IMG/VR virus record: IMGVR_UViG_3300033145_003233
Coordinates: 124,001 to 188,000 of that record
Strand: one strand, 5' to 3'
DNA length: 64,000 bases
In this document: positions 31,093-61,837 of the stretch, in pieces
Layout of the letters: every line of letters begins with the position of its first letter
Numbering within the stretch: position 1 is the stretch's first letter
The notes under the pieces: generated by a model
Seen by the model: the letters and a program-made list of their open reading frames with translations, nothing else
Told to the model about the DNA's origin: nothing
The model's database searches: none
Translations under genes and position numbers: made by a program

Positions 31093-31230
31093 AATTTATA
31101 GAACCAAAAAACTGCTGGTCTGGAAAATTAAAAGGCTTTTAATTTTCTCCCCCTTATCAGACTACCTATTATCTGTTTTATCTCAACCTGAGCTAATCTG
31201 AGCCGTTCTGAGGCAAATTATAGCAGGTAT

Positions 31231-31527
31231 CTAATCACTTTTCAATATGTCTTTAAGATAAGCAAGGAGGATTTCTCTTGCTGCCTCATGGTCAAAGACT
31301 TCACAATCATTTTCTCCTGCTACAGAGATAACAAAGCAATTTTCATCATCAACGCCGCCTGAGTCGTCTGGAAACGGACGATGGATATGTTTTGCTTTGA
31401 CAGTTCCATAAATTAGAAGTTCATCAGTAGTAGAGATCGAAGTTCCTGTCGCAAAAGACGCTGCTATAGCTGCCTTTTTTAACTCTCCTGCCAATGTCTT
31501 TATTGCTTCTTTTGCTGTTTTGTTCAT
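31231..31527 (-). CDS. hypothetical protein
   Basis: co-oriented ORF. Confidence 0.7.
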   Translation of the reverse strand: MNKTAKEAIKTLAGELKKAAIAASFATGTSISTTDELLIYGTVKAKHIHRPFPDDSGGVDDENCFVISVAGENDCEVFDHEAAREILLAYLKDILKSD

Positions 31528-31736
31528 TTTTTGATTCCCTGTTTTTTCTTTTGTTTGTTTTTAATCCTTCTCATATCAATCGCAAACCGTATTTCGATAT
31601 AAAGATAACAAGCCACCCAAGCTATAATAGTAGCTATAGCAGGCAATGACTTTATGATTATCATGGTTGCAATTACTGTTAATACTACTTCTGAAAAACT
31701 CATTTTTTGATTCCTTATTAGGTTTTCACTTAACAA
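31524..31736 (-). CDS. hypothetical membrane protein
   Basis: hydrophobic segment. Confidence 0.65.
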   Translation of the reverse strand: MLSENLIRNQKMSFSEVVLTVIATMIIIKSLPAIATIIAWVACYLYIEIRFAIDMRRIKNKQKKKQGIKK

Positions 31737-31773
31737 TCTATAGGAAAGAAAAAACGTTGGTCTGGAAAAATAG

Positions 31774-31809
31774 AAAATAGCCTTGCAAGCTGTTTACCTG
31801 CAAGGCTAT
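31774..31809 (-). terminator. intrinsic terminator
   Basis: ATAGCCTTGCA/TGCAAGGCTAT stem then T run. Confidence 0.7.
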
Positions 31810-31824
31810 AGTTCCGTGAAAACC

Positions 31825-32502
31825 TTAGCCCATTTTGTATTGAGCCGTGTTTAGATGTATTCGGGTTATATTGCCGAGCAAATAATCTCTGACAATAATC
31901 GGTTTTTTCAAGCCTTGACGTTCGCCCTCTTTTTTCTTAGGGATAAACGACTTCGCAATTGCAAGGTCTGCGGCTGTGAGTTCGTCGCCCGTATCTTTGT
32001 AACGATAAACGGCGGGTTTCGTTCCCAATATAGCCACTTGCAAATAGTAATTGTGCTGATTGTCTTTGTTGGTATGTTCAACCAAAATTCTTGACAATTT
32101 GCCCGAATAAGGGTCTCTGACATGAGTTCCCCACTGTCGGCTTTTTGCCTTAAACGTCGCGGCTGAGTTTTCTGTCATTTCTTTGACTTCGCCCTCAAAC
32201 TGAGCAAGAATTTCCTCTGACACTCCTGCCTCTAAGCAAGCCTCTCTGACTTCGGCTGTGAGTTCCCTGCCTCTTGCATTGTTGACCATATTGGTATAGG
32301 AAAAACCAACAATACAATTCGTGATGGAGTCTTTGACAACCTGCTTGTGTAGAGGATTTCCCCTTTTGTTCATTTTGAGTTCGGTTGTTGATGACAACTG
32401 AATAAATGTTGTCCCGTTCACTCTGAGCAACCGTTCTCTCAAATCTGCCTGATTGATAACGATTGCAGAGTCTTTTGTTTTTACTGCTGTGATTTCTGCC
32501 AT
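31825..32502 (-). CDS. phage hypothetical protein
   Basis: 225 aa ORF with AAGGA RBS. Confidence 0.8.
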   Translation of the reverse strand: MAEITAVKTKDSAIVINQADLRERLLRVNGTTFIQLSSTTELKMNKRGNPLHKQVVKDSITNCIVGFSYTNMVNNARGRELTAEVREACLEAGVSEEILAQFEGEVKEMTENSAATFKAKSRQWGTHVRDPYSGKLSRILVEHTNKDNQHNYYLQVAILGTKPAVYRYKDTGDELTAADLAIAKSFIPKKKEGERQGLKKPIIVRDYLLGNITRIHLNTAQYKMG

Positions 32503-32758
32503 TTTTTCATTCCTTAAAAGGTTTTCACTTGGTTCTCACTTACTAATCTATAGAAGCTGAAAATCAAAGGTCTGGAAAATTAAATGATAGTATAATTACT
32601 CATTTTCTTCTTCTTGTTCTTTTCTTCCATATTCTGTCAATATGTTTGTTTATTGCTCTGTTTATCCTATTATCACAGAAAATAGGTATTGGAAAACCTT
32701 TTACACATTGCCAAGCATAGAATTTTATTTGTCCGAATGTTAATTTCATTTCTCTATT

Positions 32759-33238
32759 TTACACTTTTTCATTCATTATGTCAAGCCCTAAATTGGGATA
32801 TTTTGCCTCAAGATACTTTTTCACTCCTGCACTATATACAGTGGTTACTATTCTATAACTACCTTCCTTATCCCCTTTTAGACGATAGACGGTTTGAGTT
32901 TTGCACCATCTTTTCACTTGTGCCTTTTGTTTTTTCCTTGCTTGGTCTTGTTCTACTGCTTCTACAAGGTTTGTAACGAATATATCACAATCCGTATCTA
33001 TTCCTTTGGGCATCATTGTTGACGGTTTTCTTGCTTGTGATAATGTTCTGCAATGGGCATCAAGTTTTTCTTTTTCCCCTTGATTGAGATAGAAGTCAAC
33101 CATGCCACCACCTGCCGTATCTGTTACTGTTCCGATTCTTTTACCATCTAACCACAAAGAGCAGGAAAAGCCATAGCCTTCTCTACCTACGAAACTTTTA
33201 ACTGCTTTTACTGTATATCCCATTATTTTTTTACCCAT
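32759..33238 (-). CDS. hypothetical protein
   Basis: downstream of repeat copy 33279. Confidence 0.8.
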   Translation of the reverse strand: MGKKIMGYTVKAVKSFVGREGYGFSCSLWLDGKRIGTVTDTAGGGMVDFYLNQGEKEKLDAHCRTLSQARKPSTMMPKGIDTDCDIFVTNLVEAVEQDQARKKQKAQVKRWCKTQTVYRLKGDKEGSYRIVTTVYSAGVKKYLEAKYPNLGLDIMNEKV

Positions 33239-33288
33239 TGTCTTATCCTTTTTATTCTATCCCGCAGAAAAATCGTTGGTCTGGAAAA

Positions 33289-33483
33289 TTAGGCATCTAC
33301 CACTTCGACATCGCCAGGGTCAGTACCTAAATCTTCGAGTTCTTCGAGTTCGTCAACTATGATAACCGGGTTTCCTTCTGAGGCAAACTGATGGATATTT
33401 TCAGCATCATCTTCTATAGCTGAGGCATCGTCTGCTAGTTTCATCGCATAATAATTGCCGCTCATTCTTGTTACTCTAAACAT
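33289..33483 (-). CDS. acidic hypothetical protein
   Basis: stop TAA is first triplet of repeat. Confidence 0.7.
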   Translation of the reverse strand: MFRVTRMSGNYYAMKLADDASAIEDDAENIHQFASEGNPVIIVDELEELEDLGTDPGDVEVVDA

Positions 33484-33741: not shown

Positions 33742-33776
33742 AATCTATACAAGCTGTTTTTTGTTTGTCTGGAAAG

Positions 33777-34064
33777 TTAAAACCCACTTTTTCTCCAATC
33801 AACAGTAGGTATTGTAATGCTAGTTATTTTCTTTTCAAAATCGAGGTTTATTTCTAAATCATATAATTCTGACCAATAAGATACATATATGCTTTGTCCA
33901 GATGGAAGAGCTGCTTCAGAATAATGGACCATCTGGAAAACTATTCCTGACATATAAAGAAAGTCTCCATTCTTATATTTTTCTTCTAGTTCTTCTGGAG
34001 TTAAAGCCCTGATATGCTTTATAAAATGTGAGGCTAGTTGTCTGGTTTCAATTATCTTTGCCAT
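33777..34064 (-). CDS. hypothetical protein
   Basis: start trimmed to MAKII; stop in repeat. Confidence 0.7.
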   Translation of the reverse strand: MAKIIETRQLASHFIKHIRALTPEELEEKYKNGDFLYMSGIVFQMVHYSEAALPSGQSIYVSYWSELYDLEINLDFEKKITSITIPTVDWRKSGF

Positions 34065-34300: not shown

Positions 34301-34335
34301 AATTTATACCAGTTGAAAATTATTTGTCTGGAAAG

Positions 34336-34704
34336 TTAGCTTCCTACATTCGGCATTGGAAATTGTGTATCCCATTTTCTCTTTCTCACAATATCTAACG
34401 GGTCTAAAAGAACATTGCCATTTTGTGTCCAGACATCAATATCACAAAAAGCAGAAGAGGTTACAAGACCTGCTAATCCTACCCCTTCTAGATGATTAGT
34501 TTCTAATACTACATGAGGTCTGAAAAAACAGTCTCCCCAGACAAACTGATGAATCATCTTCGATCCATATTTGATTTTCGTATCCCTTATTGCCCCAACA
34601 AAAGATACTACTCCTTCATCAGCCTTTTGGACAATCATTCTCAGGGGAATATGTATCCCATTTTCCCCTACCATCATTCTAGTTGCTACATCACTTCCAA
34701 GCAT
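34336..34704 (-). CDS. hypothetical protein
   Basis: between two repeat copies. Confidence 0.75.
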   Translation of the reverse strand: MLGSDVATRMMVGENGIHIPLRMIVQKADEGVVSFVGAIRDTKIKYGSKMIHQFVWGDCFFRPHVVLETNHLEGVGLAGLVTSSAFCDIDVWTQNGNVLLDPLDIVRKRKWDTQFPMPNVGS

Positions 34705-34852
34705 TTTTATTCCCTTTTTATTCTATACTTTTAATTTTTCATTTGTCTGGAAATTTGATGAATTAGGTAATATTACTGGTTCTTCTCTATCTTTTCTAGC
34801 TTGTTGTTCTATTTGTTGTTGAGCTAGTTGTATTTCTTCTTCTGGGGTTAAA

Positions 34853-35329: not shown

Positions 35330-35364
35330 AATCTATAGAAAAGATTTTTCATCTGTCTGGAAAT

Positions 35365-35811
35365 TTAGCCAAACTCATAACAGCCATCATCAATCCATCT
35401 TTTTTTAGGAATTTTCCACTTAATATCAGGATTGCCCATAAAAGCAATTACCATCCAAAACCTAACCCACATTCCCACATACATAGCAACCTCTTGTTGT
35501 TTACTGTCTGGATTAAGCCACAAATCCTCCTGAAAGTGTTCATAGGTATAATTTGTTGAGCCATACCATTTCGGCGCAGTGGGTAAATCTAACACTTCTT
35601 TGATTTTCTCCCAAGGGTATCTGACATCACCTATTTCTTTGATAAAGAATTTAGTAGGATCAAAGCCAATTATTTCTTTACCTGCTTTATAGGCTTTTGT
35701 TAACTCGTGTTCATCTACGTTGGATAGAACAACGATAGTTTCATACCTACCATGTCCATCTCCCCATCTATCGCCAACTGTAAATGATATGATAAAGTCA
35801 TCCGTTTTCAT
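35365..35811 (-). CDS. hypothetical protein
   Basis: stop in repeat. Confidence 0.78.
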   Translation of the reverse strand: MKTDDFIISFTVGDRWGDGHGRYETIVVLSNVDEHELTKAYKAGKEIIGFDPTKFFIKEIGDVRYPWEKIKEVLDLPTAPKWYGSTNYTYEHFQEDLWLNPDSKQQEVAMYVGMWVRFWMVIAFMGNPDIKWKIPKKRWIDDGCYEFG

Positions 35812-36166: not shown

Positions 36167-36206
36167 ATTTTATCTTATTAAAAAACCTTTTGTCTGGAAA
36201 AATAAT

Positions 36207-36480: not shown

Positions 36481-36618
36481 TAATAATATTCTCTAATCAG
36501 TGTAAGAATTTTCGTTTACCGCATCATAGCCTCCTTTCGAGTCCGTTTGAAGTTTCGATATTAACTTGTTATTTGTTCTCTACTCTTTATTGGGTAAAGA
36601 AATTGATTGTCTGGAAAA

Positions 36619-36786
36619 TTATAAATCTTCTCTGATAACTTCTTCTACTTCTTCTTCAGTGTAACCTGTTGCCTGTGCTATAGCTTCTATATACATTGAA
36701 GCAGAATCAGGTATAGACTTTAACATCCACTTTGCTTGTTTATAATCTTTGTGATCTCTTATTTTTTCTTTGTCAAATTTATCCAT
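36619..36786 (-). CDS. 55 aa hypothetical protein missing from track
   Basis: MDKFDKEK..; GGA RBS; stop in repeat. Confidence 0.65.
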   Translation of the reverse strand: MDKFDKEKIRDHKDYKQAKWMLKSIPDSASMYIEAIAQATGYTEEEVEEVIREDL

Positions 36787-37109: not shown

Positions 37110-37287
37110 ATTCTATCCCAGTAATTTTTCTTTTGTCTGGAAAATTAGCAGAGGGGCAAGTTTGAGGGCATAAATAAGAGGTTATTCCTTCTTCTGATAT
37201 TAACACTATCATATACCAGCCTCTTTTACATTTTCCATCTTTGATCTCTTTATATCGGCATTCTTTTTCGGTGTCAAAGGTCTCCAT
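37102..37287 (-). CDS. Cys-containing hypothetical protein
   Basis: reads through repeat copy 37135. Confidence 0.6.
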   Translation of the reverse strand: METFDTEKECRYKEIKDGKCKRGWYMIVLISEEGITSYLCPQTCPSANFPDKRKITGIEYE

Positions 37288-37787: not shown

Positions 37788-37822
37788 ATTCTATCCAATC
37801 ATTTTTTTGTTTGTCTGGAAAA

Positions 37823-38029
37823 TTAATCAGGTTCGACTGTTTCTACAAAACTATACTGCTTGCCACCCTTGTAGGTGTCATTACGAGAGGATATAAGAAC
37901 ATGATGTCCTACATATCTTTTATCCAGAGGATTTATAACCTCATAGATATTATATGGAACATCCATTGCATTAGCATAGGTCTGTGCTCTTTTTCTGGTA
38001 GCTGCTAAGGTAGATATAGTAATACTCAT
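37823..38029 (-). CDS. hypothetical protein
   Basis: stop in repeat. Confidence 0.7.
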   Translation of the reverse strand: MSITISTLAATRKRAQTYANAMDVPYNIYEVINPLDKRYVGHHVLISSRNDTYKGGKQYSFVETVEPD

Positions 38030-38535: not shown

Positions 38536-38621
38536 TCTTTTTTCTCCATAATCGAATCACTTGCACACATTATAACATTTTTCTACAATGTATGCAAGTG
38601 ATTTTTCATTTGTCTGGAAAA

Positions 38622-38792
38622 TTAGTTTTTGGGGAGAAACGACTTAATAGCTCTCCAGATGACAAACACCTGTAAGGTAACTATGGGCCAGAGAACCATC
38701 CATTTGGCAGTAAAAACTACCGAGTCAAAAGACACCTGTAAACTCAACAGGTTCTTGAGTAATCCTGCTAATGTAGCTTCTGTTCCGTTCAT
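38622..38792 (-). CDS. 56 aa membrane protein missing from track
   Basis: MNGTEATLAGLL..; stop in repeat. Confidence 0.6.
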   Translation of the reverse strand: MNGTEATLAGLLKNLLSLQVSFDSVVFTAKWMVLWPIVTLQVFVIWRAIKSFLPKN

Positions 38793-39077: not shown

Positions 39078-39312
39078 TGTTCTAACTCCTAACTGAGTTA
39101 TTTACTTCCCTGTTATTGCTTTAAGAGCAACAATCTTTGTTACTCAACAGGGGATAGGAAGGAAAAACGACTTGTCTGGAAATATAAATGTAAGTTCCGA
39201 TAAGATAAGGACTTATGTATTTTTGGGGTTAAAGAGAGATTATTATGGGACAAAAAAAGAGAGAGGCCATATCCTTATGGACTCTCTGGGGGGGAGAAAA
39301 AAATAGGTTCTC

Positions 39313-40126: not shown

Positions 40127-40145
40127 AATCTATCCTAATAAAAAA

Positions 40146-40436
40146 TCACTTGTCTGGAAATAAGTGTTTTATTTCTTCCCAATCATAGAAAGTATCGTTG
40201 ATAGTGATACCTTTTTTATGTTCTCTCATAAAATCTAAGAGGTTAGCAATATCTTCTGAATCATCAGGACGATTTATGAGATGTTGGAGTGTGTCCATAT
40301 CATTTTGTGGGATTTCTTCTTCGGAGATATTTATACTGCCATACTCATAACTATCGAATATATCGACCTCATAATATATTTCACCACTACGAAGATTCTC
40401 AACTTTATTGGCATTAGCATATATTCTATTACTCAT
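40146..40436 (-). CDS. acidic hypothetical protein
   Basis: ends FPDK* inside repeat. Confidence 0.75.
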   Translation of the reverse strand: MSNRIYANANKVENLRSGEIYYEVDIFDSYEYGSINISEEEIPQNDMDTLQHLINRPDDSEDIANLLDFMREHKKGITINDTFYDWEEIKHLFPDK

Positions 40437-40639: not shown

Positions 40640-40688
40640 TTTTATATCCTTTTTATTCTATACTAACTATTTTTCATTTATCTGGAAA

Positions 40689-41213
40689 TTAGTCAGGCAA
40701 ATATCCTGCAAGTTCCATTCCGGGTTCATTATATAACCAAGAGATAGAAATGTTAGGAAACAACTCTACCAACTTATTATATATACCAGTTGGAGGACTC
40801 CACGGAGTCATAAAGGAAAAATCAACATCACAATCGTATGCTTTACAGACTACATCACTTGCAGACCATTTTACTCCCCAATTATTTACACACCAGTCAT
40901 ACCAATTAGTAGCTCCATAGTCAGCCAAGAAACGCTTCTCCATTTTTTTAGTCATACCTCTTATAAACCAACTGCCGAGTTTTTTTTCCTCTCTTTCCTC
41001 TTTTGAAGCATTTTTCCACACTTCATATCTTTTTTCTTGTTCCTTAAATTGTGCCTCAGTGATAATATCAACAGGACGAGTAAATCCTTTTAACTCTGGA
41101 GGCAAAGAAAGAATCTTATCGAAGTCAAACTCATCAGTAATTAACTCCATAAGTTTCTTAATATCTTCTTCTGAGCCACTAATTCTTACTGTATTCTCAC
41201 ACCAATTAGGCAA
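40689..41213 (-). CDS. YubB/DUF1281-like ferredoxin-fold protein
   Basis: (M)PNWCEN..WYDWCVNNWGVKW..FMTPWSPP; TTG start. Confidence 0.75.
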   Translation of the reverse strand: MPNWCENTVRISGSEEDIKKLMELITDEFDFDKILSLPPELKGFTRPVDIITEAQFKEQEKRYEVWKNASKEEREEKKLGSWFIRGMTKKMEKRFLADYGATNWYDWCVNNWGVKWSASDVVCKAYDCDVDFSFMTPWSPPTGIYNKLVELFPNISISWLYNEPGMELAGYLPD

Positions 41214-41320: not shown

Positions 41321-41725
41321 ATGAATAAAAAAGACTTAATTTACTCAGCAGGTTTTATTGACGGAGAAGGCTGTCTTACAACAGGGCATAAATTTGCTTT
41401 TCGTCTTACTATTTCCAGTACGGATAAAAGTATTTTAGAATGGTTACAAAGCAAATTCAAGGGTAACATCAATAATCAATGGCTTCCTAAAAACCCTAAC
41501 CATAATATGGCTTGGAAATGGGTTTTATGTAAGAAATCCGATTTACTCACTTTCTTATTAGCAATTATACCATATCTTAAATTGAAAAAGAGCCAAGCTC
41601 AACTTATAATCAATTATATGAAAACCTATCCTAATCGAAGAAAGAAAAATGAAATCTCTAATCGAGAAATAGATTTTCTAAAAATTAAAGAGCTATTGCG
41701 TTATTTGAAAAATGTTCATTCTTAA
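41321..41725 (+). CDS. single-motif LAGLIDADG homing endonuclease
   Basis: YSAGFIDGEGCL..PYLKLKKSQA; opposite strand to neighbours. Confidence 0.88.
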   Translation: MNKKDLIYSAGFIDGEGCLTTGHKFAFRLTISSTDKSILEWLQSKFKGNINNQWLPKNPNHNMAWKWVLCKKSDLLTFLLAIIPYLKLKKSQAQLIINYMKTYPNRRKKNEISNREIDFLKIKELLRYLKNVHS

Positions 41726-41758
41726 ATTATAGAACTAAAAAATCATTTGTCTGGAAAA

Positions 41759-42190
41759 TTATTCCCAAGTGATGGTTGCAGGTATTTCCTGGCAGGTTTT
41801 ACCATCAAAAATCCATCTCCATAAATAACCATCTTCGCCGCTCATCTCAATAAAACTATCCTTTTTAACAAAGAGTGCAATAGCCTCAAAGAGATGTTCA
41901 TCATTTCCCAACTTTTCTCCCTCAAAGTAGATAGAAGTGATATTGCCATCGCCATCGGTTTCAGGATGCCATCGAAAAGCATCTAAAATATCTTCGATAT
42001 TTTGAGCATTATCAAGTTCTGAGTTATCTACCCAAGAATATGACCTAATACATATATCAAACCCAGATCTACCGCCGCCTACTTTGTCTCTTTCGTCAAG
42101 TAATTTTTTATGAACGTGCTTGAATGCCTCTACCTTTTTATCAGCAGAGAGAAAAAAGTCTTGATCTTTTTGTTCCATACAATAACCCAT
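41759..42190 (-). CDS. phage hypothetical protein
   Basis: start trimmed to MGYC; FEGEKLG..GEDGYLWRW. Confidence 0.78.
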   Translation of the reverse strand: MGYCMEQKDQDFFLSADKKVEAFKHVHKKLLDERDKVGGGRSGFDICIRSYSWVDNSELDNAQNIEDILDAFRWHPETDGDGNITSIYFEGEKLGNDEHLFEAIALFVKKDSFIEMSGEDGYLWRWIFDGKTCQEIPATITWE

Positions 42191-42247
42191 TTTGATATTT
42201 CTCCTTTTTATTCTATAAAAGGAATTTTTCATTTGTCTGGAAAATTC

Positions 42248-42760: not shown

Positions 42761-42929
42761 CTTTTTTCTCCTTTTTCATAAGATAACCATAAGACAATGA
42801 CTTACATCACAATCTTCTTCACAGGTTTCACAATCTTCTGTTGTAGAAACCACTTCATTAGAAAGAACTTCATCTTCATAGATATGAAAAAGACTCATTG
42901 GATAACCACAACGAACTCTTTTGCCTTTT

Positions 42930-43127
42930 TTAGTAATTTATCCTACCCCCACAATTAAGACAATATATGCTATGTAAGCCATGACAAATAACATTGGAAA
43001 AATCGAACATAACAGGTTCTTTACAAACACACATATCTTTATGATTACCAAGTTCTACTCTCTTTTTATGAAGTTCAGCAGTTCTTTGGTTTATTTCTTC
43101 TGCAAATTGTCTTATTCTTACTTTCAT
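42930..43127 (-). CDS. Cys-containing hypothetical protein
   Basis: ATG 25 nt after repeat. Confidence 0.68.
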   Translation of the reverse strand: MKVRIRQFAEEINQRTAELHKKRVELGNHKDMCVCKEPVMFDFSNVICHGLHSIYCLNCGGRINY

Positions 43128-43164
43128 ATTCTACACCACCTAAAAATTATTTGTCTGGAAAAAT

Positions 43165-43194
43165 AAAAAAGAGAGTAGAATTGCTCCTACTCTC
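43165..43194 (-). terminator. intrinsic terminator
   Basis: GAGAGTAG/CTACTCTC stem then T6. Confidence 0.7.
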
Positions 43195-43812: not shown

Positions 43813-43892
43813 CTGTCTTTTCTCCTAATTTATTAGTTTTTATTCTTTTTTAACGACATTGTATAGTAATGAAAAAACATTTGTCTGGAAAA

Positions 43893-44219
43893 TTAGCCCC
43901 AATATGGGCCTTCAAAAATTTTCAACAACTTTTCATTACCACCACTAGTTAAAACTATTTTAGTATAAGTAGGCTCTAACTTACAATAAAGAGGCCAATC
44001 TTCTGAAAGAACATCTTCAAAATATGTTTTATATTTTATAATAGCTCCATTAGATTGTAACGATGAATGACATTTACAAGGAGGTCTGAAATAACCATCT
44101 TCTAAAGGAGGATCATATAATGGATTAGCTCTTGGATCTGCATATACCTTTTCCTTCTTTTTGCGGAGAAAAAGATAACAAATAAAAACAATTGCTAAGA
44201 TTGCCAGAATCTTAATCAT
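43893..44219 (-). CDS. membrane-anchored hypothetical protein
   Basis: N-terminal TM; stop in repeat. Confidence 0.72.
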   Translation of the reverse strand: MIKILAILAIVFICYLFLRKKKEKVYADPRANPLYDPPLEDGYFRPPCKCHSSLQSNGAIIKYKTYFEDVLSEDWPLYCKLEPTYTKIVLTSGGNEKLLKIFEGPYWG

Positions 44220-44601: not shown

Positions 44602-44654
44602 TAACTTATTTCTCCTTTTTATTCTATATTATCTATTTTCATTTGTCTGGAAAA

Positions 44655-46058
44655 TTATAATTTCCATTTGTATTCCATAGAAGGAACAGGACAACTACCT
44701 ATAATATCATAGAAAAGAGAGGATTGAGATTGATAAACTCTTATTCTATGTCTTTTGTAATATTCTCCCTTATATTTGTAACTATAAGGGAATACTTTAC
44801 ATATTTTACCATATTCTTTATCAATTTTTTCAACAATCATCTGTTGATTATCTTTTGTGAAACATTCACTACATAGAATTATTACAACCTGTTTGGTGCT
44901 ACTATTTTTTCTTCTCTGATAACTCGTTCCATCATCCATAAACCAATTCAACAAAGAAACAGGAGAAATATCTATATCTTCTGGAATCACTTTTTTATAA
45001 TTGTTCCATTCGGGATACCATTTTCTATATAACGGTTTTAATTCTTTATGAGACAAGCTCCTGATAGAGTATGCAGTATAAAATTCTTTTTTAAATCCCC
45101 ATTTTTTACTAGGAAAAGAAATCTCTTTTTTAATCTTCATTCTATTTTTATTAAAAATTTGTTTATAAACATACTCTATATGATCTTTACCAATATTCTT
45201 TTTATAAAAACGAGGATTAGATATATTACTCTTTCTATTATATACCCCTAAACCTGCATCCCCCAATAAAGAACCTTCTATTACAGGAATATTAAAAATA
45301 AAGCCATCTTCTTCTCTATTGCAAGTTAGCCCCTCACTGATATTCCTTACATTAATATTATGACGTAGAAGAGACTGTCTAGCAGAGTTAGGAGTCTTTG
45401 CCCCGCATAACTTTGTTATATTTCTGGTGCTACATTTTTCTTCAACATATTTTTGTTCTAACCATTCTTTATCATTCAATAATTCATAATAAAAAGATTT
45501 AGAAACTACATAGCGACGAGCTTCTCTATTATCTCTGATTTTTATATCAAATTTTCTTAATGCCCTTATTACGTTTCCACTATCACAACCTATCAATTTT
45601 GCCATCTGTTTAGATGATTGAGTCTCTTCAATATATTTTTGACATAACCATTCTCTACTTTCTAGCTCCTTATATTTAGATTTATATTCTTTTAATTTCC
45701 CAGCTTCGCTAATAGTTCTTGTAGAAATATTATGTCTTTTAAGTGCTGTAAATACTGATTTTTGATTAGAATTAGCTAACTCTGCTACTTGATAAGAGGT
45801 AAGTTGCTCTGTTATGTATTTCTGATAAAGCCAGTCTTTGTTATTTAGTTTTTCTGCTTTAAATTTTTTCTTGCCTTTTCTTTTTTTCGCAGCAGAAGAA
45901 CAATTACGAACTTTTATATCAAATTTTCTCAAACATCTTAAAACACTGCTAGGATTAACTCCTATTTCTTTGCCAATATCAACGGTGGATAATTGATCTG
46001 TTGTATACTTTCGAAAGAGCCAATCTTTATCATTTAAATACTTATTTGGTAATGCCAT
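44655..46058 (-). CDS. double-motif LAGLIDADG endonuclease with N-terminal HTH-like repeats
   Basis: IEGSLLGDAGL and LLNWFMDDGT; four LN/ExxxWLxxKY repeats. Confidence 0.85.
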   Translation of the reverse strand: MALPNKYLNDKDWLFRKYTTDQLSTVDIGKEIGVNPSSVLRCLRKFDIKVRNCSSAAKKRKGKKKFKAEKLNNKDWLYQKYITEQLTSYQVAELANSNQKSVFTALKRHNISTRTISEAGKLKEYKSKYKELESREWLCQKYIEETQSSKQMAKLIGCDSGNVIRALRKFDIKIRDNREARRYVVSKSFYYELLNDKEWLEQKYVEEKCSTRNITKLCGAKTPNSARQSLLRHNINVRNISEGLTCNREEDGFIFNIPVIEGSLLGDAGLGVYNRKSNISNPRFYKKNIGKDHIEYVYKQIFNKNRMKIKKEISFPSKKWGFKKEFYTAYSIRSLSHKELKPLYRKWYPEWNNYKKVIPEDIDISPVSLLNWFMDDGTSYQRRKNSSTKQVVIILCSECFTKDNQQMIVEKIDKEYGKICKVFPYSYKYKGEYYKRHRIRVYQSQSSLFYDIIGSCPVPSMEYKWKL

Positions 46059-47430: not shown

Positions 47431-47687
47431 TCTCTGCGTCCTTTAATCTTTGGTTTTCTGTCATATGAGATATTGCTTTTATACAAATTTCATCTGTATC
47501 GGCTGGTAATCCTAAATCTTCGAGCATCGCTGCCCAAATTACCTTACTCTTACAATCTTCTTTATATATTGTTCCATTCATTCCACTTTTCCTTATTATA
47601 ACCTATTTTCTACCTTACGTCAAGAAAAAATTACTTGTCTGGAAATTAATAACTTAATCCTTCTTTCACTTTCAAGTGTTATTTAAC

Positions 47688-53269: not shown

Positions 53270-53414
53270 TGTTAATCTCCATTATTATTCGGTGCTAATA
53301 AGATAGATATTAGTCCCTACAGGAATGGTAGTTCATCCTAATATCTACACTATTTCCATTATAACTTGATTGATAGGGGCTATAAGTCCCTAGGTCATAA
53401 TGACCATCTTCAAT

Positions 53415-53924
53415 CTAATATAATGAAAAAACAGTTGTCTGGAAAATAAATGGAAATTCTGCTTTTAAATCGTTTCTAAAAACAGTATTATATTTAAAAT
53501 TAGTGGTAAGAATGATAACAGGTATTATTATGTATATGGATACAAATAGAATAAGAGGAAAAAAGTTGTCTCCTTTCTTTTTTTTATTATCATAACAATT
53601 ATCTCGAAAACATATTATATTCCATAATAATAAAAATACACAAAATATTGTATATAAAACCCAGGCTGTCTCATCGTCCATAGGCAAATCCCCCGGAGAA
53701 TCGATCCAGCTAATAACAGGCAACCAACTCCCACATAAAAAAGATACTATTATAGCTCCTATAATAGATCCCTTAAATAAGCTATAATAGTATTTCATTT
53801 CTCCTTTTACTTCATTAGCCATTATTCTTCTACGTTTGATTTTCTCCGCTTCTTTAAGGATCTTTGCTTCTTTAAGGATCTTTCTAACTTCTCTTACATT
53901 TTTTTCCCACCAGCTCTCACTCAT
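53415..53924 (-). CDS. multi-pass membrane protein
   Basis: three hydrophobic helices; reads through repeat copy 53437. Confidence 0.7.
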   Translation of the reverse strand: MSESWWEKNVREVRKILKEAKILKEAEKIKRRRIMANEVKGEMKYYYSLFKGSIIGAIIVSFLCGSWLPVISWIDSPGDLPMDDETAWVLYTIFCVFLLLWNIICFRDNCYDNKKKKGDNFFPLILFVSIYIIIPVIILTTNFKYNTVFRNDLKAEFPFIFQTTVFSLY

Positions 53925-54011
53925 GCTCTTATCCCCATTAAATTATTATTTCATAAATAGTTATTCATCCTATATAGTTATTATAGAAAAACAATTGTCT
54001 GGAAAATTAAA

Positions 54012-57444: not shown

Positions 57445-57450
57445 AAATAA

Positions 57451-57536: not shown

Positions 57537-57541
57537 ATAAG

Positions 57542-57627: not shown

Positions 57628-57691
57628 AAAAATAGGCAAGAGCCGTGTGTAACCCTTTTACTCCCTAACTCTCCTTGTTAGGGAAACCTAA

Positions 57692-57763
57692 CCCCCTCAC
57701 ACGGTTACGATCCGAGTATTTTTGCTCGACAAGCAAATGTGATAGCCAGTTCACTATAAGGGG
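57692..57763 (-). tRNA. tRNA-Asp(GTC)
   Basis: TTTGC-TTGTCGA-GCAAA. Confidence 0.82.
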
Positions 57764-57775
57764 TTAATGAGAACA

Positions 57776-57848
57776 ATATTCAAGGACGAGTCGAACACCC
57801 ATTTCCGGCTTGTTGGCCGGTGCCCTACCATTAGACGACTAAAGTATC
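57776..57848 (-). pseudogene. degenerate tRNA (Val-like)
   Basis: D and T arms recognisable; 6-nt loop CAACAA; broken acceptor stem. Confidence 0.5.
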
Positions 57849-57890
57849 CTCGATATCGTATCTAGAAAAATATATCGGATAGTTCTCAAA

Positions 57891-57965
57891 TGGGCGAGAG
57901 AGGATTTGAACCTCTGACTATTTCCGTGTAAAAGAAACACTCTATCCAGACTGAGTTACACGCCC
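57891..57965 (-). tRNA. tRNA-Val(TAC)
   Basis: TTTCT-TTTACAC-GGAAA. Confidence 0.88.
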
Positions 57966-58086
57966 TAAAAACTATTCGAACTATTATTTTATTTGATATG
58001 AACCATAAAATAATTTTGTATATAAATTAAAGGTTTTTATAAAAATAGTTCGAATATATAATAGAAACATTTATAGGAGAAATATT

Positions 58087-58707
58087 ATGAATAAAGGTCT
58101 TAAAGAAAAAATAATATCATTAAGAATAAAAGGGACTAGTTATCGTCAAATTGCTAAAAAACTAAATTGCTCTAGAGGAACAATTAGCTTACATTGTTCT
58201 AAATTAGAAGAGAATAAAACAATTGAACAATGTAATAGAAAAATGTTGGCTTTTCACCAAAATGAAAGTCTTAATTTTTCAAAAAAAACAATTAGAATCA
58301 TAAAAATACTTTATAATTACGGAATTCAAACTACTGAAATAGCAGATATCCTTAATATAGATATTAGACCAATTAGATCTTTTTGTATAAAACTTCCTAA
58401 AAAAGATTACTCCTTTTTATCAAACTATGAGAAAGTTAAGAGAAGAAGAAAGAAAATTAAAATATTAGGAGTTATCTATAAAGGAGGCAAATGCCAAAAA
58501 TGCGGTTATAATAAATATTTTGAAAATCTAGAATTTCATCATGTAGATCCTAACAAAAAAGAATTTACAATCGCTCAGAAATGTAACCATAGGTGGTTAA
58601 CTATTAAAAAAGAATTAGACAAATGTGTTTGTTTATGTTCAACTTGTCACAGAGAAGAACATATAAAAAAACATATTACAGATATAACACCCATAGATTT
58701 AGAATAG
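58087..58707 (+). CDS. HTH plus HNH endonuclease
   Basis: GGKCQKCGYNK..LEFHH..KCVCLCSTCHREEH. Confidence 0.88.
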   Translation: MNKGLKEKIISLRIKGTSYRQIAKKLNCSRGTISLHCSKLEENKTIEQCNRKMLAFHQNESLNFSKKTIRIIKILYNYGIQTTEIADILNIDIRPIRSFCIKLPKKDYSFLSNYEKVKRRRKKIKILGVIYKGGKCQKCGYNKYFENLEFHHVDPNKKEFTIAQKCNHRWLTIKKELDKCVCLCSTCHREEHIKKHITDITPIDLE

Positions 58708-58775
58708 GATTAATAGGAGTTGAACCTATATACCCGCCTTATCAGGACGGAGCTTTGCCATTAAGCTATAATCCT
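58705..58775 (-). tRNA. tRNA-Ile(GAT)
   Basis: CCGTC-CTGATAA-GGCGG. Confidence 0.88.
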
Positions 58776-58868
58776 AGAAATGGGGAGTAGGCAAACTCCC
58801 CATGGGAATTTACAAAACTTCATTTGTGGCCCTCTTGGACCCCCTATTAACTTTTTATAGATCATAAA

Positions 58869-58967
58869 TCGTAATATCTTACGACTTATATAATATTTCC
58901 TGCTTAAGTCGTAATATCTTACGACTTATATAATATTTCCTGCTTAAGTCGTAATATCTTACGACTT
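58869..58967. repeat. 40-bp tandem repeat (x2.5) containing palindrome AAGTCGTAA-TATC-TTACGACTT
   Basis: three palindromes separated by identical 18-nt linkers. Confidence 0.9.
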
Positions 58968-58969
58968 AG

Positions 58970-59040
58970 CTCCACCACCTAGATTCGAACTAGGACCGAA
59001 GCATTAACAGTGCTCTATGCTACCGTTACACCATGATGGA
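58970..59040 (-). tRNA. tRNA-Asn(GTT)
   Basis: GAGCA-CTGTTAA-TGCTT. Confidence 0.9.
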
Positions 59041-59047
59041 ATTATAT

Positions 59048-59380
59048 TTATTGGTTATAATCTTCTTTGTCATGTAATTCCATATGACATCTACAACATA
59101 ACAAATCACATTTATCTACTTCTTTTTTAAGCCTCTTAAGACTTTTATCATAACTCTTAGCTATTTGTAATTCTTTTTCTTTTTTATCACGATGATGAAA
59201 AGAATAAGCAGCTGGTATACCTTTATTATATCCGCATTCTTGACACTTACCACCCTTGTAAAGAACAAGCTTCCATTTAGTTCTTTTTCGACAATTAATT
59301 ACATTTCTGGATCTTCTTTGCTTTTGATATTCTTCCCACTTTTCTTCTCCCATCTCTGCTCTGCGTTTAGTGATCCTCAT
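59048..59380 (-). CDS. HNH endonuclease
   Basis: GGKCQECGYNK..YSFHH..KCDLLCCRCHMELH. Confidence 0.88.
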   Translation of the reverse strand: MRITKRRAEMGEEKWEEYQKQRRSRNVINCRKRTKWKLVLYKGGKCQECGYNKGIPAAYSFHHRDKKEKELQIAKSYDKSLKRLKKEVDKCDLLCCRCHMELHDKEDYNQ

Positions 59381-59478
59381 TTTTCTCTCCTATATAGATA
59401 ATTTACTATCTATATATTCGATATATAATGATAAACTCCTTTAGTTAACCAATAAATATTTACTTTTTAAAGATCTAA

Positions 59479-59549
59479 CAGCCCCATCAGGGTTCGAACC
59501 TGAGACGCGAGATTCAAAGTCTCGAATGTTACCGCTACACCACAGGGCT
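59479..59549 (-). tRNA. tRNA-Gln(TTG)
   Basis: CGAGA-CTTTGAA-TCTCG. Confidence 0.9.
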
Positions 59550-59703
59550 ATTCGGTGCTACTATCGTCTTTATTCAATTCTTCAAAAAGTTCTTCTACTG
59601 TATCACAAGTAAAAATATCTTTACCAAGATGAGCATCTTCAAAAGCTTGTATTGTCTCAGCATTCGGTACTAAAAATTTTCTTTTTCTTTTTATAGTTCC
59701 CAT
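59548..59703 (-). CDS. RelB/DinJ-like antitoxin C-terminal domain protein (51 aa)
   Basis: PNAETIQAFEDAHLGK..DTVEELFEELN; start trimmed to MGTIK. Confidence 0.65.
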   Translation of the reverse strand: MGTIKRKRKFLVPNAETIQAFEDAHLGKDIFTCDTVEELFEELNKDDSSTE

Positions 59704-59713
59704 ATCTACCAAT

Positions 59714-59743
59714 AAAAAAAGACGACTGAGTTTTTCAGTCGCC
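59714..59743 (-). terminator. intrinsic terminator-like hairpin
   Basis: CGACTGA/TCAGTCG stem then T7. Confidence 0.6.
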
Positions 59744-60336
59744 TTTGAACGAGAAAATATATATTCAAAAGCGACTATCCAGGGCTTCCTACTGTGAGGA
59801 TAAACCAATTATCCATGTAGGATTGGACTGACGGTTCCGCCGTAGCGGCCGATAAATCCTGCCTACATAGATTGCGTCTATGTTTAGTTATGGCTTCTGG
59901 ATATTTGATTGTGATAGTCATCTTCTGGGACTTTCCCTAATAAATAAATAACGAATTACTATATTATATCATATATAGTCGGCATTTCCTTCTTTTTTCT
60001 TTAATCTTTTCAACTTTTTTTTCAATACTTATAAAAGCTGGGTTAACTACCCAAAAAAGCGATACCCTCTTGAGTAGTTAAACCCAGTCGGAGGAGGCTG
60101 TTTAATTTAAAAAGCGGGAAAAAGGAAAACAGGCCCTTTTAGGTTTTGTCGGCAGACATCCTATCTTCCTATTCCCAATCTTCTTCATCAACTCCATATC
60201 AAAACACATTATACCAGAAATCTTTCACTTTTCAACTACTTTATAAAAAAAACATTTGTCTGGAAAAATAAGACTCCTATAGAAGCACATCTCACAAGCC
60301 CGCCAAAGTTTCTGATCCACACTATCCACAGGAGTC

Positions 60337-61263
60337 TTAGTAATTACCAAACAAACATCTACAAATGAAGCTACGCTCACTCGGTGCTACTTCTTCTTCT
60401 ACAAAGCCACTATAGTCAGGAAGGGAGTTATAATAAACCTCCATATCCCTAACAGAGATACCATGAGTGAGACACCATCTATCATCTTCCAAACTATAAT
60501 CTGAAATACACTCTACACCATTATCAGAATGCTCCCAGATACTATAAAACTCTTTACCAGTTCTACCATATCGGTGCTTGATACCTACACCCAAAACAAA
60601 CAAGTTGCCTCTTTGACCCTGTAGATGTTTGAGATTCAGTGCTATATCTACTAAGTGAGGCAAAGAAGTGCCACCCTTAATAGTACCATCCTGGTTTAAT
60701 TGAGAAAGTAGTATCACATGACACTTAACCTCTAAACAAGCATCCCTAAATCCTTTTTTAATACCACCACCCTCTATAATCAAACGGGCTTGTTTCTTAC
60801 TACCTGTCTCAAATTCTTCTATCTCATTGACACTATCAACAATAACTATGCTAGGATTAACATAGTAAATAGCCTCTATCATCTTTCCCAAGGTCTTAGC
60901 ATCACTACAAATAAAACTATCAAGTTGAGAGCCAGAGAGACCAGACGTTTGTTTTACCCAACCAGCAAAGGTTGAAACATCTACCTCATTTTGAAAATAA
61001 AGAACCTTTACGCCTGCTCTAGCATAACTACCTGCCAACTTTATAGCTGCTCTACTTTTACCTACACCACTCTCACCACTCCACAAGCTAATCTTACCTT
61101 GTGGAATTCCCCATTGGTAAGTTATTTGGCGTCTAGCATGAGTAGCATTAAAAGTGCTACAACCATAAATCCAATCTAACTCTTGGAATCCGGTAGGCGC
61201 TCTTAATACAGGTTTAGCCTCAACCTCTGAGATTTTAAAAATATTATCCATTCCTGTCTCCAT
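60337..61263 (-). CDS. RadA/Sms-like RecA-fold ATPase
   Basis: TGFQELD..GESGVGKS (Walker A), IVIVDS (Walker B), IKGGTSLPHLVD, KHRYG; no N-terminal Zn finger or Lon-like domain. Confidence 0.85.
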   Translation of the reverse strand: METGMDNIFKISEVEAKPVLRAPTGFQELDWIYGCSTFNATHARRQITYQWGIPQGKISLWSGESGVGKSRAAIKLAGSYARAGVKVLYFQNEVDVSTFAGWVKQTSGLSGSQLDSFICSDAKTLGKMIEAIYYVNPSIVIVDSVNEIEEFETGSKKQARLIIEGGGIKKGFRDACLEVKCHVILLSQLNQDGTIKGGTSLPHLVDIALNLKHLQGQRGNLFVLGVGIKHRYGRTGKEFYSIWEHSDNGVECISDYSLEDDRWCLTHGISVRDMEVYYNSLPDYSGFVEEEVAPSERSFICRCLFGNY

Positions 61264-61301
61264 TCTATTATATTGAAAGAGTTTTCCAATTGTCTGGAAA
61301 A

Positions 61302-61778
61302 TTATTTCTTATTTCCCGAAAAAAAGACACAAGCATATAAAATACATATTATAGCAGGACTCCAAAATAGACACGCAGGATGAAATATCCTGGGACTTAT
61401 ATATAAACAAGCTGCTGATTTGTCATGCATAGCAAAAACCCTATGATCTGTATGGTATCCATTAAGAGTATCACCACCAGGCCTCCACATCCTACCAGGT
61501 ATAGTAACACTCATCAAGCTCTTTAGATCTACAGAATGACCATCATTATTGTATACCCTATGAACTAATAGATCTGAACCATCTTCTGCTTTTAAAGGAT
61601 TAGGAGTAGCTACCTCCAGAACAAATAATCCCACTACTGCCAAGACAACAGCTATAAAAGAGCCATTAGGAGACCTAGCTGCCAATATAAAGCAGATTAT
61701 TAGATAAACTATGCCTACAGCACAAAAAGCTGATTTTATGCTCCACAAGCTCACTGGGATGTCAATTTCTGCTAACAT
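61302..61778 (-). CDS. membrane protein
   Basis: three hydrophobic helices; stop in repeat. Confidence 0.72.
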   Translation of the reverse strand: MLAEIDIPVSLWSIKSAFCAVGIVYLIICFILAARSPNGSFIAVVLAVVGLFVLEVATPNPLKAEDGSDLLVHRVYNNDGHSVDLKSLMSVTIPGRMWRPGGDTLNGYHTDHRVFAMHDKSAACLYISPRIFHPACLFWSPAIICILYACVFFSGNKK

Positions 61779-61837
61779 ATAGTTTCCTTTCTATATTAGT
61801 ATAGCATAAAATTGATTGTCTGGAAAATTATTCGGTG

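What the first reader, a model, noticed from the sequence alone, without database searches (positions are those of the whole stretch)
31118..61830. About 29 copies of a gene-boundary element that supplies the upstream stop codon: cassette-like architecture
Seen: minus-strand TAATTTTCCAGAC-N17-TATA[GA]AWT. In 12 copies the TAA at the start of the element is the stop of the upstream ORF (33289, 33777, 34336, 35365, 36619, 37823, 38622, 40689, 41759, 43893, 44655, 61302). In three copies the upstream ORF is out of register and reads through (37102, 40146, 53415). Known: repeated promoter elements mediate modular gene shuffling in T4-type phages (PeSL elements). Inference: a phage-specific promoter that also acts as the junction for capturing and rearranging single-gene cassettes, in an integron-like manner.
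Basis: partly seen in the sequence, partly recalled or inferred. Interest (0 to 1): 0.78.

Follow-up and report, generated by a model that had tools for sequence, protein, structure and literature searches.

The report
Repeated phage promoter that seeds gene shuffling
A 38-base promoter-like element sits in front of almost every small gene unit in one region of a 548-kb uncultivated phage; its core matches the half-site of an operator-like palindrome at the head of the region, and its copies are crossover points for gene gain and loss, as in T4-type phages and not as in an integron.

Summary
There are 27 minus-strand copies of TAWTTTTCCAGAC-(A5 or T5 tract)-TAGAWT in 31093-61830, plus 4 half-sites at 63141-63272 (20 strict matches against 0.07 expected). 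In 12 copies the TAA is the stop codon of the upstream gene, and in 3 the upstream gene reads through.

The window lies in a 547,943-bp virus record whose portal is distantly like that of Bacillus phage G. The element is co-oriented with the genes, fills the intergenic gaps, and has a -35-position core and a sigmaA-like -10. Relatives keep this architecture but change the core around an invariant CCAG: TTGCCAGAG, AATCCAGAC, AAACCAGTC, GCCAGGTT. In each lineage the same core forms two palindromes bracketing a canonical sigmaA promoter in front of a conserved 228-aa gene at the head of the region. I therefore read the core as the site of a phage-encoded specificity factor. The factor was not identified.

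Closer relatives show gene gain and loss with breakpoints inside the element: one hybrid element where this genome has element-gene-element, and one insert flanked by a 16-nt repeat of the element. That matches PeSL-type homologous shuffling. No integrase was found and each cassette carries its own promoter, so "integron-like" is not supported. The transcription start is unresolved.

The parts
31093..31130 (-). element copy E31125; the ATG of the next gene abuts the TAGAWT box
   Evidence: (score 39.7)
31735..31772 (-). element copy E31767, preceded by a terminator-like hairpin at 31809-31777
   Evidence: (40.2)
32545..32582 (-). element copy E32577
   Evidence: 37.7
33254..33291 (-). element copy E33286; TAA is the stop of ORF 33483..33289; AAAAAGGA leader follows
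   Evidence: (42.5)
33742..33779 (-). element copy E33774; TAA is the upstream stop; ATG abuts the box
   Evidence: (37.8)
34301..34338 (-). element copy E34333; TAA is the upstream stop; ATG abuts the box
   Evidence: (40.9)
34720..34757 (-). element copy E34752 with AAAAAGGG leader
   Evidence: 35.0
35330..35367 (-). element copy E35362; TAA is the upstream stop; ATG abuts the box
   Evidence: (37.9)
36167..36204 (-). element copy E36199; ATG abuts the box
   Evidence: (36.6)
36584..36621 (-). element copy E36616; TAA is the upstream stop; about 245 nt without a convincing ORF follow
   Evidence: (29.4)
37110..37147 (-). element copy E37142; the upstream ORF reads through to 37102; ATG abuts the box
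   Evidence: (41.4)
37788..37825 (-). element copy E37820; TAA is the upstream stop; ATG abuts the box (product starts MKRLIAIFVV, signal-peptide-like)
   Evidence: (37.1)
38587..38624 (-). element copy E38619; TAA is the upstream stop; the core is followed by TTGCAT-17-TATAAT
   Evidence: 40.3
39149..39186 (-). weak element copy E39181 (core kept, box degenerate)
   Evidence: 26.4
40127..40164 (-). element copy E40159; the upstream ORF ends inside it at 40146; ATG abuts the box
   Evidence: (36.6)
40655..40692 (-). variant copy E40687 (TTTCCAGAT); TAA is the upstream stop
   Evidence: (27.6)
41724..41761 (-). element copy E41756; TAA is the upstream stop; it faces a LAGLIDADG-like ORF on the opposite strand (41321-41725)
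   Evidence: (43.1)
42210..42247 (-). element copy E42242 with AAAAAGGAG leader; left breakpoint of an indel against L122
   Evidence: (38.6)
43128..43165 (-). element copy E43160, preceded by a terminator-like hairpin at 43196-43169; an indel against L122 starts right after its TAGAAT
   Evidence: (39.7)
43858..43895 (-). element copy E43890; TAA is the upstream stop
   Evidence: 42.9
44620..44657 (-). element copy E44652 (spacer one base shorter); TAA is the stop of the LAGLIDADG gene
   Evidence: (22.1)
47612..47649 (-). core copy E47644, followed by TTGACG-17-TATAAT
   Evidence: (30.1)
53412..53449 (-). element copy E53444; downstream partner of the one-cassette indel
   Evidence: (34.9)
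53972..54009 (-). element copy E54004, directly after tRNA-Met; upstream partner of the one-cassette indel
   Evidence: (27.3)
53415..53924 (-). 169-aa gene present here between E54004 and E53444; relative L120 lacks it and has one hybrid element
60233..60270 (-). core copy E60265, followed by TTGAAA-17-TATAAT
   Evidence: 33.2
61267..61304 (-). element copy E61299; TAA is the upstream stop; site of the 56-aa gene insertion in L182
   Evidence: (35.3)
61793..61830 (-). element copy E61825
   Evidence: 32.1
63141..63180 (.). proximal palindrome: two inverted core half-sites (15-nt arms, 93% complementary, 10 nt between the arms), downstream of the sigmaA-type -10
63193..63221 (-). canonical sigmaA-type promoter, TTGACA-17-TATGAT, between the two palindromes
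63224..63281 (.). distal palindrome of the same half-sites, 92 nt from the proximal one
62421..63107 (-). conserved 228-aa gene at the head of the region; the model suggests a winged-helix-like domain; candidate core-binding factor, not shown
42776..43127 (-). 65-aa and 40-aa genes, present here and absent in L122, lying exactly between TAGAAT of E43160 and the AAAAAGGAG leader of the 170-aa gene
41321..42190 (.). block present here and absent in L122: 143-aa gene, E41756 and the opposite-strand LAGLIDADG-like ORF

Best explanation
The element is a phage-specific promoter. It stands in front of nearly every 1-3-gene unit of a hypervariable region of small genes of mostly unknown function (plus a tRNA island) in a phage-G-like megaphage. 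It has four parts: an AT-rich flank TAWTTT, an invariant 9-bp core TTTCCAGAC at the -35 position, an A5 or T5 tract in the spacer, and a sigmaA-like -10 box TAGAWT.

Inferred: the core is not read as an ordinary -35. It is the binding site of a phage-encoded specificity factor, either an activator or a sigma-like protein. That factor is made first from a canonical sigmaA promoter, which is itself bracketed by two palindromes of the same core, suggesting feedback control. The factor then switches on about 40 promoters. The conserved 228-aa gene next to the palindromes is the candidate factor, but this is not shown.

The TAA that doubles as a stop codon is gene packing: upstream ORFs run into the AT-rich flank.

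Shown by comparison with relatives: because about 40 bp of near-identical sequence recurs every ~570 bp between unrelated genes, the copies act as crossover points for homologous or short-homology recombination. This adds, deletes and reorders promoter-plus-gene cassettes.
For: Statistics and genome-wide clustering. Copies share the orientation of the genes, and the element fills the intergenic gaps; the next start codon is 0-30 nt after the box in 18 of 29 copies. The consensus scan reads CAGACA-18-TAGAAT.

The architecture is conserved in relatives with a changed core. G001 has about 75 copies of TAATTTGCCAGAGTG-A tract-TTATAG. G002 has TTCCAGAC. L186 and L188 have AATCCAGAC, and L187 has AAACCAGTC.

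In G000, G001, G002, L182, L183, L186-L189, L191 and L193, the phage's own core forms inverted pairs around a TTGACA-17-TATAAT promoter in front of the 228-aa homologue. L185 and L192 show one or imperfect pairs. Array copies are single half-sites.

The 228-aa protein has more than 190 homologues and a confident model (pLDDT 88.8). Its best structural matches are all winged-helix DNA-binding domains, though weak (Z up to 5.8).

Copies outside the array precede non-structural genes: NAD-dependent ligase, NAPRTase and an RlaP-like gene.

Recombination evidence: a hybrid element in L120; a 16-nt flanking repeat in L182; indels abutting elements in L122; and gene order shuffled among G000, G001, G002 and L122.
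Against: There are no transcript data; no sequencing run was listed. In 9 copies the ATG follows TAGAWT with no gap. In G001 a hairpin starts 1-2 nt after TATAG in 18-22 of 57 copies, against about 3 in shuffles. Both suggest that RNA starts inside the box, which a sigma70-type -10 geometry does not allow.

The factor is not identified. The 228-aa protein is highly conserved while the core flanks vary. The only candidate specificity residue (R170) failed its prediction: it also occurs with ATCCAGAC and TCTCCAGTC cores. The fold matches fall below the tool's own reliability line. L190 has no palindrome. The protein-DNA complex job was not folded.

Because intergenic DNA here is almost entirely element, viable indels would abut elements by selection alone. 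Only two events carry a sequence-level signature of crossover within copies.
Confidence: 0.68

Rival explanations
1. This is an ordinary early promoter read by the host sigmaA holoenzyme alone. CAGACA acts as a weak -35, TAATTTT as an UP-like element and TAGAAT as the -10. No phage factor is involved, and the repeats are simply copies of a strong promoter.
For: The consensus scan scores the copies as CAGACA-18-TAGAAT, 9 of 12. No phage RNA polymerase was detected. By my own recollection, not checked here, SPO1-type host-takeover modules use many strong sigmaA promoters.
Against: Nine core bases are invariant in 28 copies, more than a -35 hexamer needs. In relatives the equivalent position reads CAGAGT, CAGTCG or CAGGTT, which is not -35-like, while the rest of the architecture is kept. 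The genome does contain true TTGACA-17-TATAAT promoters, so the host consensus is standard. The core also occurs as conserved palindromes.
Confidence: 0.12
2. The promoter is read by a phage-encoded sigma factor or an unrecognised phage polymerase that initiates inside the TATAG box. This would give leaderless or near-leaderless mRNAs. The core would then lie at about -29 to -21 and would not be a -35.
For: The ATG abuts the box in 9 copies here, and at the same distance in G001, G002 and L186. In G001, hairpin 5' arms start just after TATAG. G000 encodes at least 4 sigma-like ORFs. One of them, the 191-aa region-4-only protein s217, has only 28-31% identical counterparts in G001, and these lie inside G001's array.
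Against: No polymerase was found by Pfam or PHROGs in the ORFs tested. A sigma factor does not explain the conserved palindromes. Five of the nine abutting copies have a GG 9-12 nt upstream that could serve as a weak ribosome site on read-through transcripts (read by eye). The hairpin enrichment is not seen in G000 or G002.
Confidence: 0.25
3. This is a site-specific cassette system. A dedicated recombinase or Rep-like nickase recognises the core and excises or captures single-gene cassettes, in an integron-like or rolling-circle-like way.
For: Breakpoints lie inside the element. The protein-atlas feature search gave weak leads to Rep_trans and Phage_CRI initiators for the 228-aa protein (score 0.86). 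Inverted repeats of the core lie next to that gene.
Against: No tyrosine or serine recombinase was found. The atlas score lies in the range the tool calls 'a lead only', and structural matches point to winged-helix domains, not Rep folds. Array copies are single half-sites. The cassettes carry promoters, there are no paralogous cassettes, and the events seen are explained by homology between copies.
Confidence: 0.06
4. The palindromes are a replication origin, and the 228-aa protein is its initiator, with the neighbouring AAA_25/KaiC-like ATPase as helicase or loader. The promoter copies would then share the initiator's box much as DnaA boxes occur in promoters.
For: The winged-helix matches include ORC/Cdc6 and Rep3-type initiators. 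A conserved ATPase gene lies two genes downstream in all relatives. The half-sites repeat at 92-nt spacing.
Against: All structural matches are weak. The palindromes precisely bracket a promoter, which is the usual operator layout. Forty to seventy-five single boxes at a fixed distance from a -10 box and from start codons point to transcription.
Confidence: 0.1

Closest known systems
PeSL (promoter-early stem-loop) cassettes of T4-type phages (Arbiol et al. 2010, PMC2839356; Comeau et al. 2014, PMC4122927)
   Same: Both are repeated promoter motifs concentrated in hyperplastic regions full of small non-essential genes of unknown function. In both, indels and replacements between relatives have breakpoints in the motif, so the motif acts as a point of exchange between otherwise unrelated sequences.
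   Different: A PeSL is a composite of a sigma70-like promoter and a terminator stem-loop. Here only 2 of 21 array copies follow a terminator-like hairpin. The core is not sigma70-like, changes with the lineage, and also occurs as palindromes at one regulatory gene. The phage is a phage-G-like megaphage and not T4-like. Mini-circles could not be tested.
T4 middle promoters (MotA box at -30 plus a sigma70 -10, with AsiA); from my own knowledge
   Same: Both combine a host-type -10 with a phage-specific box that replaces the -35. In both, the factor would be made from an early host-type promoter, and the promoters precede early or middle non-structural genes.
   Different: No homologue of the MotA C-terminal domain or of AsiA was found (the controls for these searches were silent). 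The box sequence differs. Palindromic copies at the regulator gene are not a MotA feature. The factor here is unidentified.
SPO1 host-takeover module (from my own knowledge; the papers listed were not read)
   Same: Both are dense clusters of small phage genes, each or nearly each with its own strong promoter, in a phage of a low-GC Gram-positive type host.
   Different: The SPO1 early promoters are described as sigmaA promoters. Here the -35 position holds a lineage-specific invariant 9-mer.
Integron attC/attI cassette arrays
   Same: Both are arrays of single-gene units separated by a repeated boundary element.
   Different: Here no IntI-type recombinase was found, the boundary element is not an imperfect inverted repeat, every unit has its own promoter, and the observed events fit homologous exchange.

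Membership tests
PeSL-type regulatory cassette | Strong promoter motif repeated in a hyperplastic region of non-essential genes | tested here: met
   21 copies among about 41 small genes in 31.1-44.7 kb. Of the 17 array proteins scanned (about 41 genes), most have no family match. Gene content between conserved anchors differs in G001 and G002. Promoter activity itself was not measured.
PeSL-type regulatory cassette | Stem-loop terminator joined to the promoter | tested here: not met
   Only two terminator-like hairpins lie directly upstream of copies, at 31809-31777 and 43196-43169.
PeSL-type regulatory cassette | Indels between close relatives with breakpoints in the motif | tested here: met
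   Hybrid element in L120; 16-nt flanking repeat of the element in L182; three more indels abutting elements in L122.
PeSL-type regulatory cassette | Excised mini-circles joined at the motif | not testable with these tools
   No sequencing run was listed for this genome.
Integron | Adjacent IntI-type tyrosine recombinase | tested here: not met
   PF00589 and PF00239 gave no match in the 547,943-bp record, while the control genomes matched.
Integron | attC-type imperfect inverted repeat at each cassette boundary | tested here: not met
   Array copies have no inverted partner within 50 nt upstream; the best candidates have 2-4 mismatches of 8 at scattered offsets. Only the two head copies have perfect partners.
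Integron | Promoterless cassettes expressed from one common promoter | tested here: not met
   The repeated element itself has promoter anatomy and precedes each unit.
MotA/AsiA-dependent middle promoter | MotA and AsiA homologues encoded by the phage | tested here: inconclusive
   PF09158 and PF09010 gave no match in G000, but nothing matched in the control genomes either.
MotA/AsiA-dependent middle promoter | Phage-specific box replacing the -35, combined with a host-type -10 | tested here: met
   Invariant core at the -35 position and TAGAWT at the -10. The core varies with lineage while the -10-like box stays. This is anatomy only.
Sigma70-type promoter | Transcription start 6-8 nt downstream of the -10 hexamer | tested here: inconclusive
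   No reads were available. The ATG abuts the box in 9 copies, and hairpins start just after TATAG in G001. Both argue against this geometry.
Winged-helix DNA-binding protein (228-aa product) | Helix-turn-helix plus beta-hairpin wing fold with a significant structural match | tested here: inconclusive
   The model is confident. The top 50 structural matches are nearly all winged-helix domains over residues 58-190, but Z is at most 5.8 and Foldseek E is above 0.05.

The most novel reading that the evidence does not exclude
A family of megaphages organises a 30-60-kb hypervariable gene region with one lineage-specific DNA word (nnCCAGnn). An unknown phage factor reads this word, possibly the conserved 228-aa protein, which has no recognised family. 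The word switches on dozens of promoters, forms an autoregulatory operator at the factor's own gene, and initiates RNA inside a TATAG box to give leaderless messages. Its copies double as the recombination substrate that renews the gene set. That would be a previously undescribed transcription system with coupled evolvability.
Probability: 0.2. Interest if true: 0.75.

Novelty: new variant of a known kind. Interest (0 to 1): 0.5.

Why it matters
Huge uncultivated phages are known almost only as gene lists, and how they time their gene expression is unknown. This finding gives a concrete, testable regulatory code for one widespread lineage: the 228-aa head gene has more than 190 homologues in metagenomes. 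The code comprises a lineage-specific box, an operator-like palindrome at one conserved gene, and a set of 40-75 target promoters per genome. The finding also extends the PeSL idea, in which repeated promoters act as engines of gene shuffling, beyond T4-type phages. It explains why a region of genes of unknown function turns over so quickly between relatives while its promoters stay. The abutting start codons raise the possibility of widespread leaderless early messages.

Tried and rejected
1. Nucleotide search of 14 kb of the array against cultured phages found nothing. The 228-aa protein has no homologue there either.
2. An exact 18-mer search of viral contigs gave only a chance hit inside a gene (L001).
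3. Single-protein locus searches with the PARP-like and 230-aa proteins found nothing.
4. The two sequencing-run searches listed none, so transcription starts and circle junctions could not be examined.
5. The protein-dimer plus palindrome complex job was not folded and is not evidence either way.
6. I searched for a specificity residue in the 228-aa protein. R170 was the only column separating TTTCCAGAC phages from the others. Three new loci with R170 and other cores refuted it.
7. The second gene (zinc ribbon plus an RMF-like NPY motif) is not homologous in all relatives, so I dropped it as a candidate factor.
8. A phage RNA polymerase was sought with PF00562 and PF00940, and with PHROGs on the 14 largest ORFs. 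None was found; the 5139-aa ORF is tape-measure-like.
9. There are no paralogous cassettes in the array, so tandem duplication is not the source of the repeats.
10. Rfam finds only tRNAs in 30-64 kb.
11. I considered a -10 hexamer upstream of the TATAG box. G001 has TAnnnT there, but G000 does not, so I rejected it.

Full report
THE GENOME. The window is bases 124,001-188,000 of a single-contig virus record of 547,943 bp with 33.6% G+C. CheckV rates it complete. Its portal protein is 31.7% identical to gp14 of Bacillus phage G over 59% of its length. Strong AAAGGAG ribosome sites and true TTGACA-17-TATAAT promoters are present. Both point to a host with standard sigmaA-type transcription, probably a low-GC Gram-positive. 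Nearly all genes in the window are on the minus strand.

THE OBSERVATION. A weight matrix built from the copies finds 40 minus-strand and a few plus-strand sites in the whole genome. Of these, 27 lie in window 31093-61830, and four more half-sites lie at 63141-63272.

The consensus is TAWTTT-TTCCAGAC-AAATG-(AAAAA or TTTTT)-about 7 nt-aTAGAWT. The nine bases TTTCCAGAC are invariant in 28 copies. The tract is A5 in 10 copies and T5 in 18.

Where the TAA position is not used as a stop it reads TAA in only 7 of 17 copies. The stop use is therefore opportunistic packing against an AT-rich flank, not a fixed part of the word.

ANATOMY AND SETTING. Twenty-one copies lie among about 41 small genes (35-225 aa) between 31.1 and 44.7 kb. 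Of the 17 proteins scanned, most have no family match. The exceptions are a phosphatase-like protein and an Api92-like domain.

All copies point the same way as the genes. After the box, the next start codon follows with no gap in 9 copies, after 2-30 nt in 9 copies, and after 31-80 nt in 7. In the 2-30-nt class the leader often begins AAAAAGGAG. A consensus scan reads the copies as CAGACA-18-TAGAAT. Only two copies follow a terminator-like hairpin.

Some copies keep the core and tract but are followed by a full TTGACA-type promoter instead of the box: 47644, 60265, 38619 and 63242. Outside the array the element precedes an NAD-dependent DNA ligase, a nicotinate phosphoribosyltransferase, an RlaP-like protein and small unknown genes. 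These are non-structural genes.

RELATIVES: THE CORE CHANGES AND THE ARCHITECTURE STAYS. A 461-kb relative, G001, was found through the phosphatase-like protein (59% identity). It has only two chance copies of TTTCCAGAC. It does have about 75 copies, in 367-428 kb, of TAATTTGCCAGAGTG-A tract-about 7 nt-TTATAG.

A 298-kb record, G002, uses TTCCAGAC. Metagenome contigs carrying homologues of the head gene use AATCCAGAC (L186, L188, L191), AAACCAGTC (L187), TCTCCAGTC (L190), TTTCCAGG/C (L193), GCCAGGTT (L189) and TACCAGA (L185).

Only CCAG is common to all of these. At the position that would be a -35 hexamer, most variants do not resemble TTGACA. The region is syntenic in G000, G001 and G002, with shared anchor genes. 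The genes between the anchors are mostly different, and some anchors change order.

THE HEAD OF THE REGION. At 63141-63281 the core occurs as two inverted pairs 92 nt apart. In the proximal pair the arms are 15 nt long and 93% complementary; the distal arms (24 nt) are 79% complementary. The pairs bracket TTGACA-17-TATGAT, and the 228-aa gene 63107-62421 follows.

The same layout stands in front of the homologous gene in G001, G002, L182, L183, L186-L189, L191 and L193. In each case it is built from that phage's own core. L185 has one pair, L192 has imperfect ones, and L190 has none. Both arms change together from lineage to lineage, so the dyad is functional. Array copies have no inverted partner.

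I infer that the core is the site of a phage-encoded factor. It would bind paired sites at one host-type promoter, for feedback, and single sites at the -35 position of its target promoters.

THE CANDIDATE FACTOR. The 228-aa protein has more than 190 homologues at 50-68% identity and no Pfam family. Its model is confident, with pLDDT 88.8 and pTM 0.85. Foldseek finds nothing significant. A Foldseek-independent search ranks winged-helix DNA-binding domains first across residues 58-190: ORC/Cdc6, Fur/PerR, OmpR, forkhead and histone H1. However, Z is at most 5.8, below the tool's own line for trust.

A feature search pointed weakly to Rep_trans and Phage_CRI (0.86, "a lead only"). My specificity test failed. 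The one column that separated TTTCCAGAC phages (R170, at the tip of the hairpin) also occurs with other cores. The complex prediction was not run by the tool.

The genome also encodes at least four sigma-like proteins. One of them is a region-4-only protein of 191 aa whose weak G001 counterparts lie inside G001's array. The factor is therefore open.

RECOMBINATION AT THE ELEMENT. Contigs from one sample (L120, L122, L183) and from one run (L182) are 75-95% identical to the window. Five events stand out.

(a) G000 has E54004, a 169-aa gene, then E53444, where L120 has one element. L120's upstream flank matches the tRNA-Met side of E54004, and its downstream flank matches the E53444 side. The switch lies within TTTTCCAGACAA.

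(b) L182 carries an extra 56-aa gene at E61299, flanked by a 16-nt direct repeat, ATAAGAAATAATTT(T)C. That repeat is the 5' part of the element.

(c) G000 has 65-aa and 40-aa genes exactly between TAGAAT of E43160 and the AAAAAGGAG leader of the 170-aa gene. L122 lacks them, while G002 has the 65-aa gene in the same abutting position.

(d) G000 has a 143-aa gene, E41756 and an opposite-strand LAGLIDADG-like ORF between the E42242 leader and the next gene. L122 lacks this block.

(e) L122 has a 239-aa HTH-domain gene (I read it as a possible homing endonuclease, but no nuclease domain was detected) inserted just before an element, and it ends on that element's TAA.

Events (a) and (b) carry the sequence signature of exchange between copies. 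Events (c) to (e) abut elements, but selection for intact genes could explain that. In the tRNA island, rearrangements occur without elements, next to tRNA and HNH-like genes.

No tyrosine or serine recombinase was found. This matches PeSL-mediated modular shuffling in T4-type phages (PMC2839356, PMC4122927) and does not match an integron.

WHAT REMAINS UNEXPLAINED. If TAGAWT is a sigma70-type -10, RNA should start 6-8 nt after it. Yet in 9 copies the start codon follows the box directly, including one gene whose product starts with a clear signal-peptide-like sequence. The same fixed distance recurs in G001, G002 and L186.

In G001, hairpins with co-varying arms begin 1-2 nt after TATAG in 18-22 of 57 copies, against about 3 in shuffles. 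G000 and G002 do not show this enrichment.

Either RNA starts inside the box, giving leaderless or near-leaderless messages and implying a non-canonical initiation, or these genes are translated from read-through transcripts. No phage polymerase was found in the searches made. Only 5'-end mapping can settle this.

VERDICT. The element is best read as a factor-dependent phage promoter whose repeated copies also serve as recombination points. It is a new variant of a known kind (PeSL-like) in an uncultivated megaphage lineage, with two added features: a core that varies with lineage, and operator-like palindromes at a conserved head gene. The integron analogy fails its defining tests.

Noticed in passing
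window 936-10708, minus strand: Twelve tandem paralogous genes of 254-293 aa with 8-nt overlaps. The first and last are 44% identical, and there is no Pfam match.
   Followed up: partly
window 47686-59550: An island of 27 tRNA genes interleaved with a family of HNH-like genes (54154-54630, 59048-59380, 50956-51462) and an HTH-HNH ORF on the plus strand (58087-58707). Relatives rearrange this island without using the element.
   Followed up: partly
window 46126-47430, minus strand: A 434-aa protein with WGR, PARP regulatory and PARP catalytic domains. It is conserved in G001 (45%) and G002 (57%).
   Followed up: no
window 41321-41725, plus strand: A weak LAGLIDADG-like ORF on the opposite strand, faced head-on by element E41756, so the element would make antisense RNA to it. 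The block is absent from relative L122.
   Followed up: partly
window 36340-36583: About 245 nt downstream of element E36616 contain no convincing ORF. This may be a non-coding RNA or a very small gene.
   Followed up: no
G001 369-428 kb (loci L030-L033): Hairpins with co-varying arms and a GTTAAT-like loop begin 1-2 nt after the TATAG box in about a third of copies, against about 5% in shuffles.
   Followed up: partly
G000:C1:256450-257640: Two adjacent ECF-like sigma ORFs (199 and 190 aa) have no counterpart in relative G001. A FliA-like 281-aa sigma (44.5-45.4 kb) and a 240-aa sigma-like ORF (297.6 kb) are 54% conserved in G001.
   Followed up: partly
G000:C1:486468-501887: A single ORF of 5139 aa whose only family match is to tail tape-measure proteins.
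   Followed up: partly
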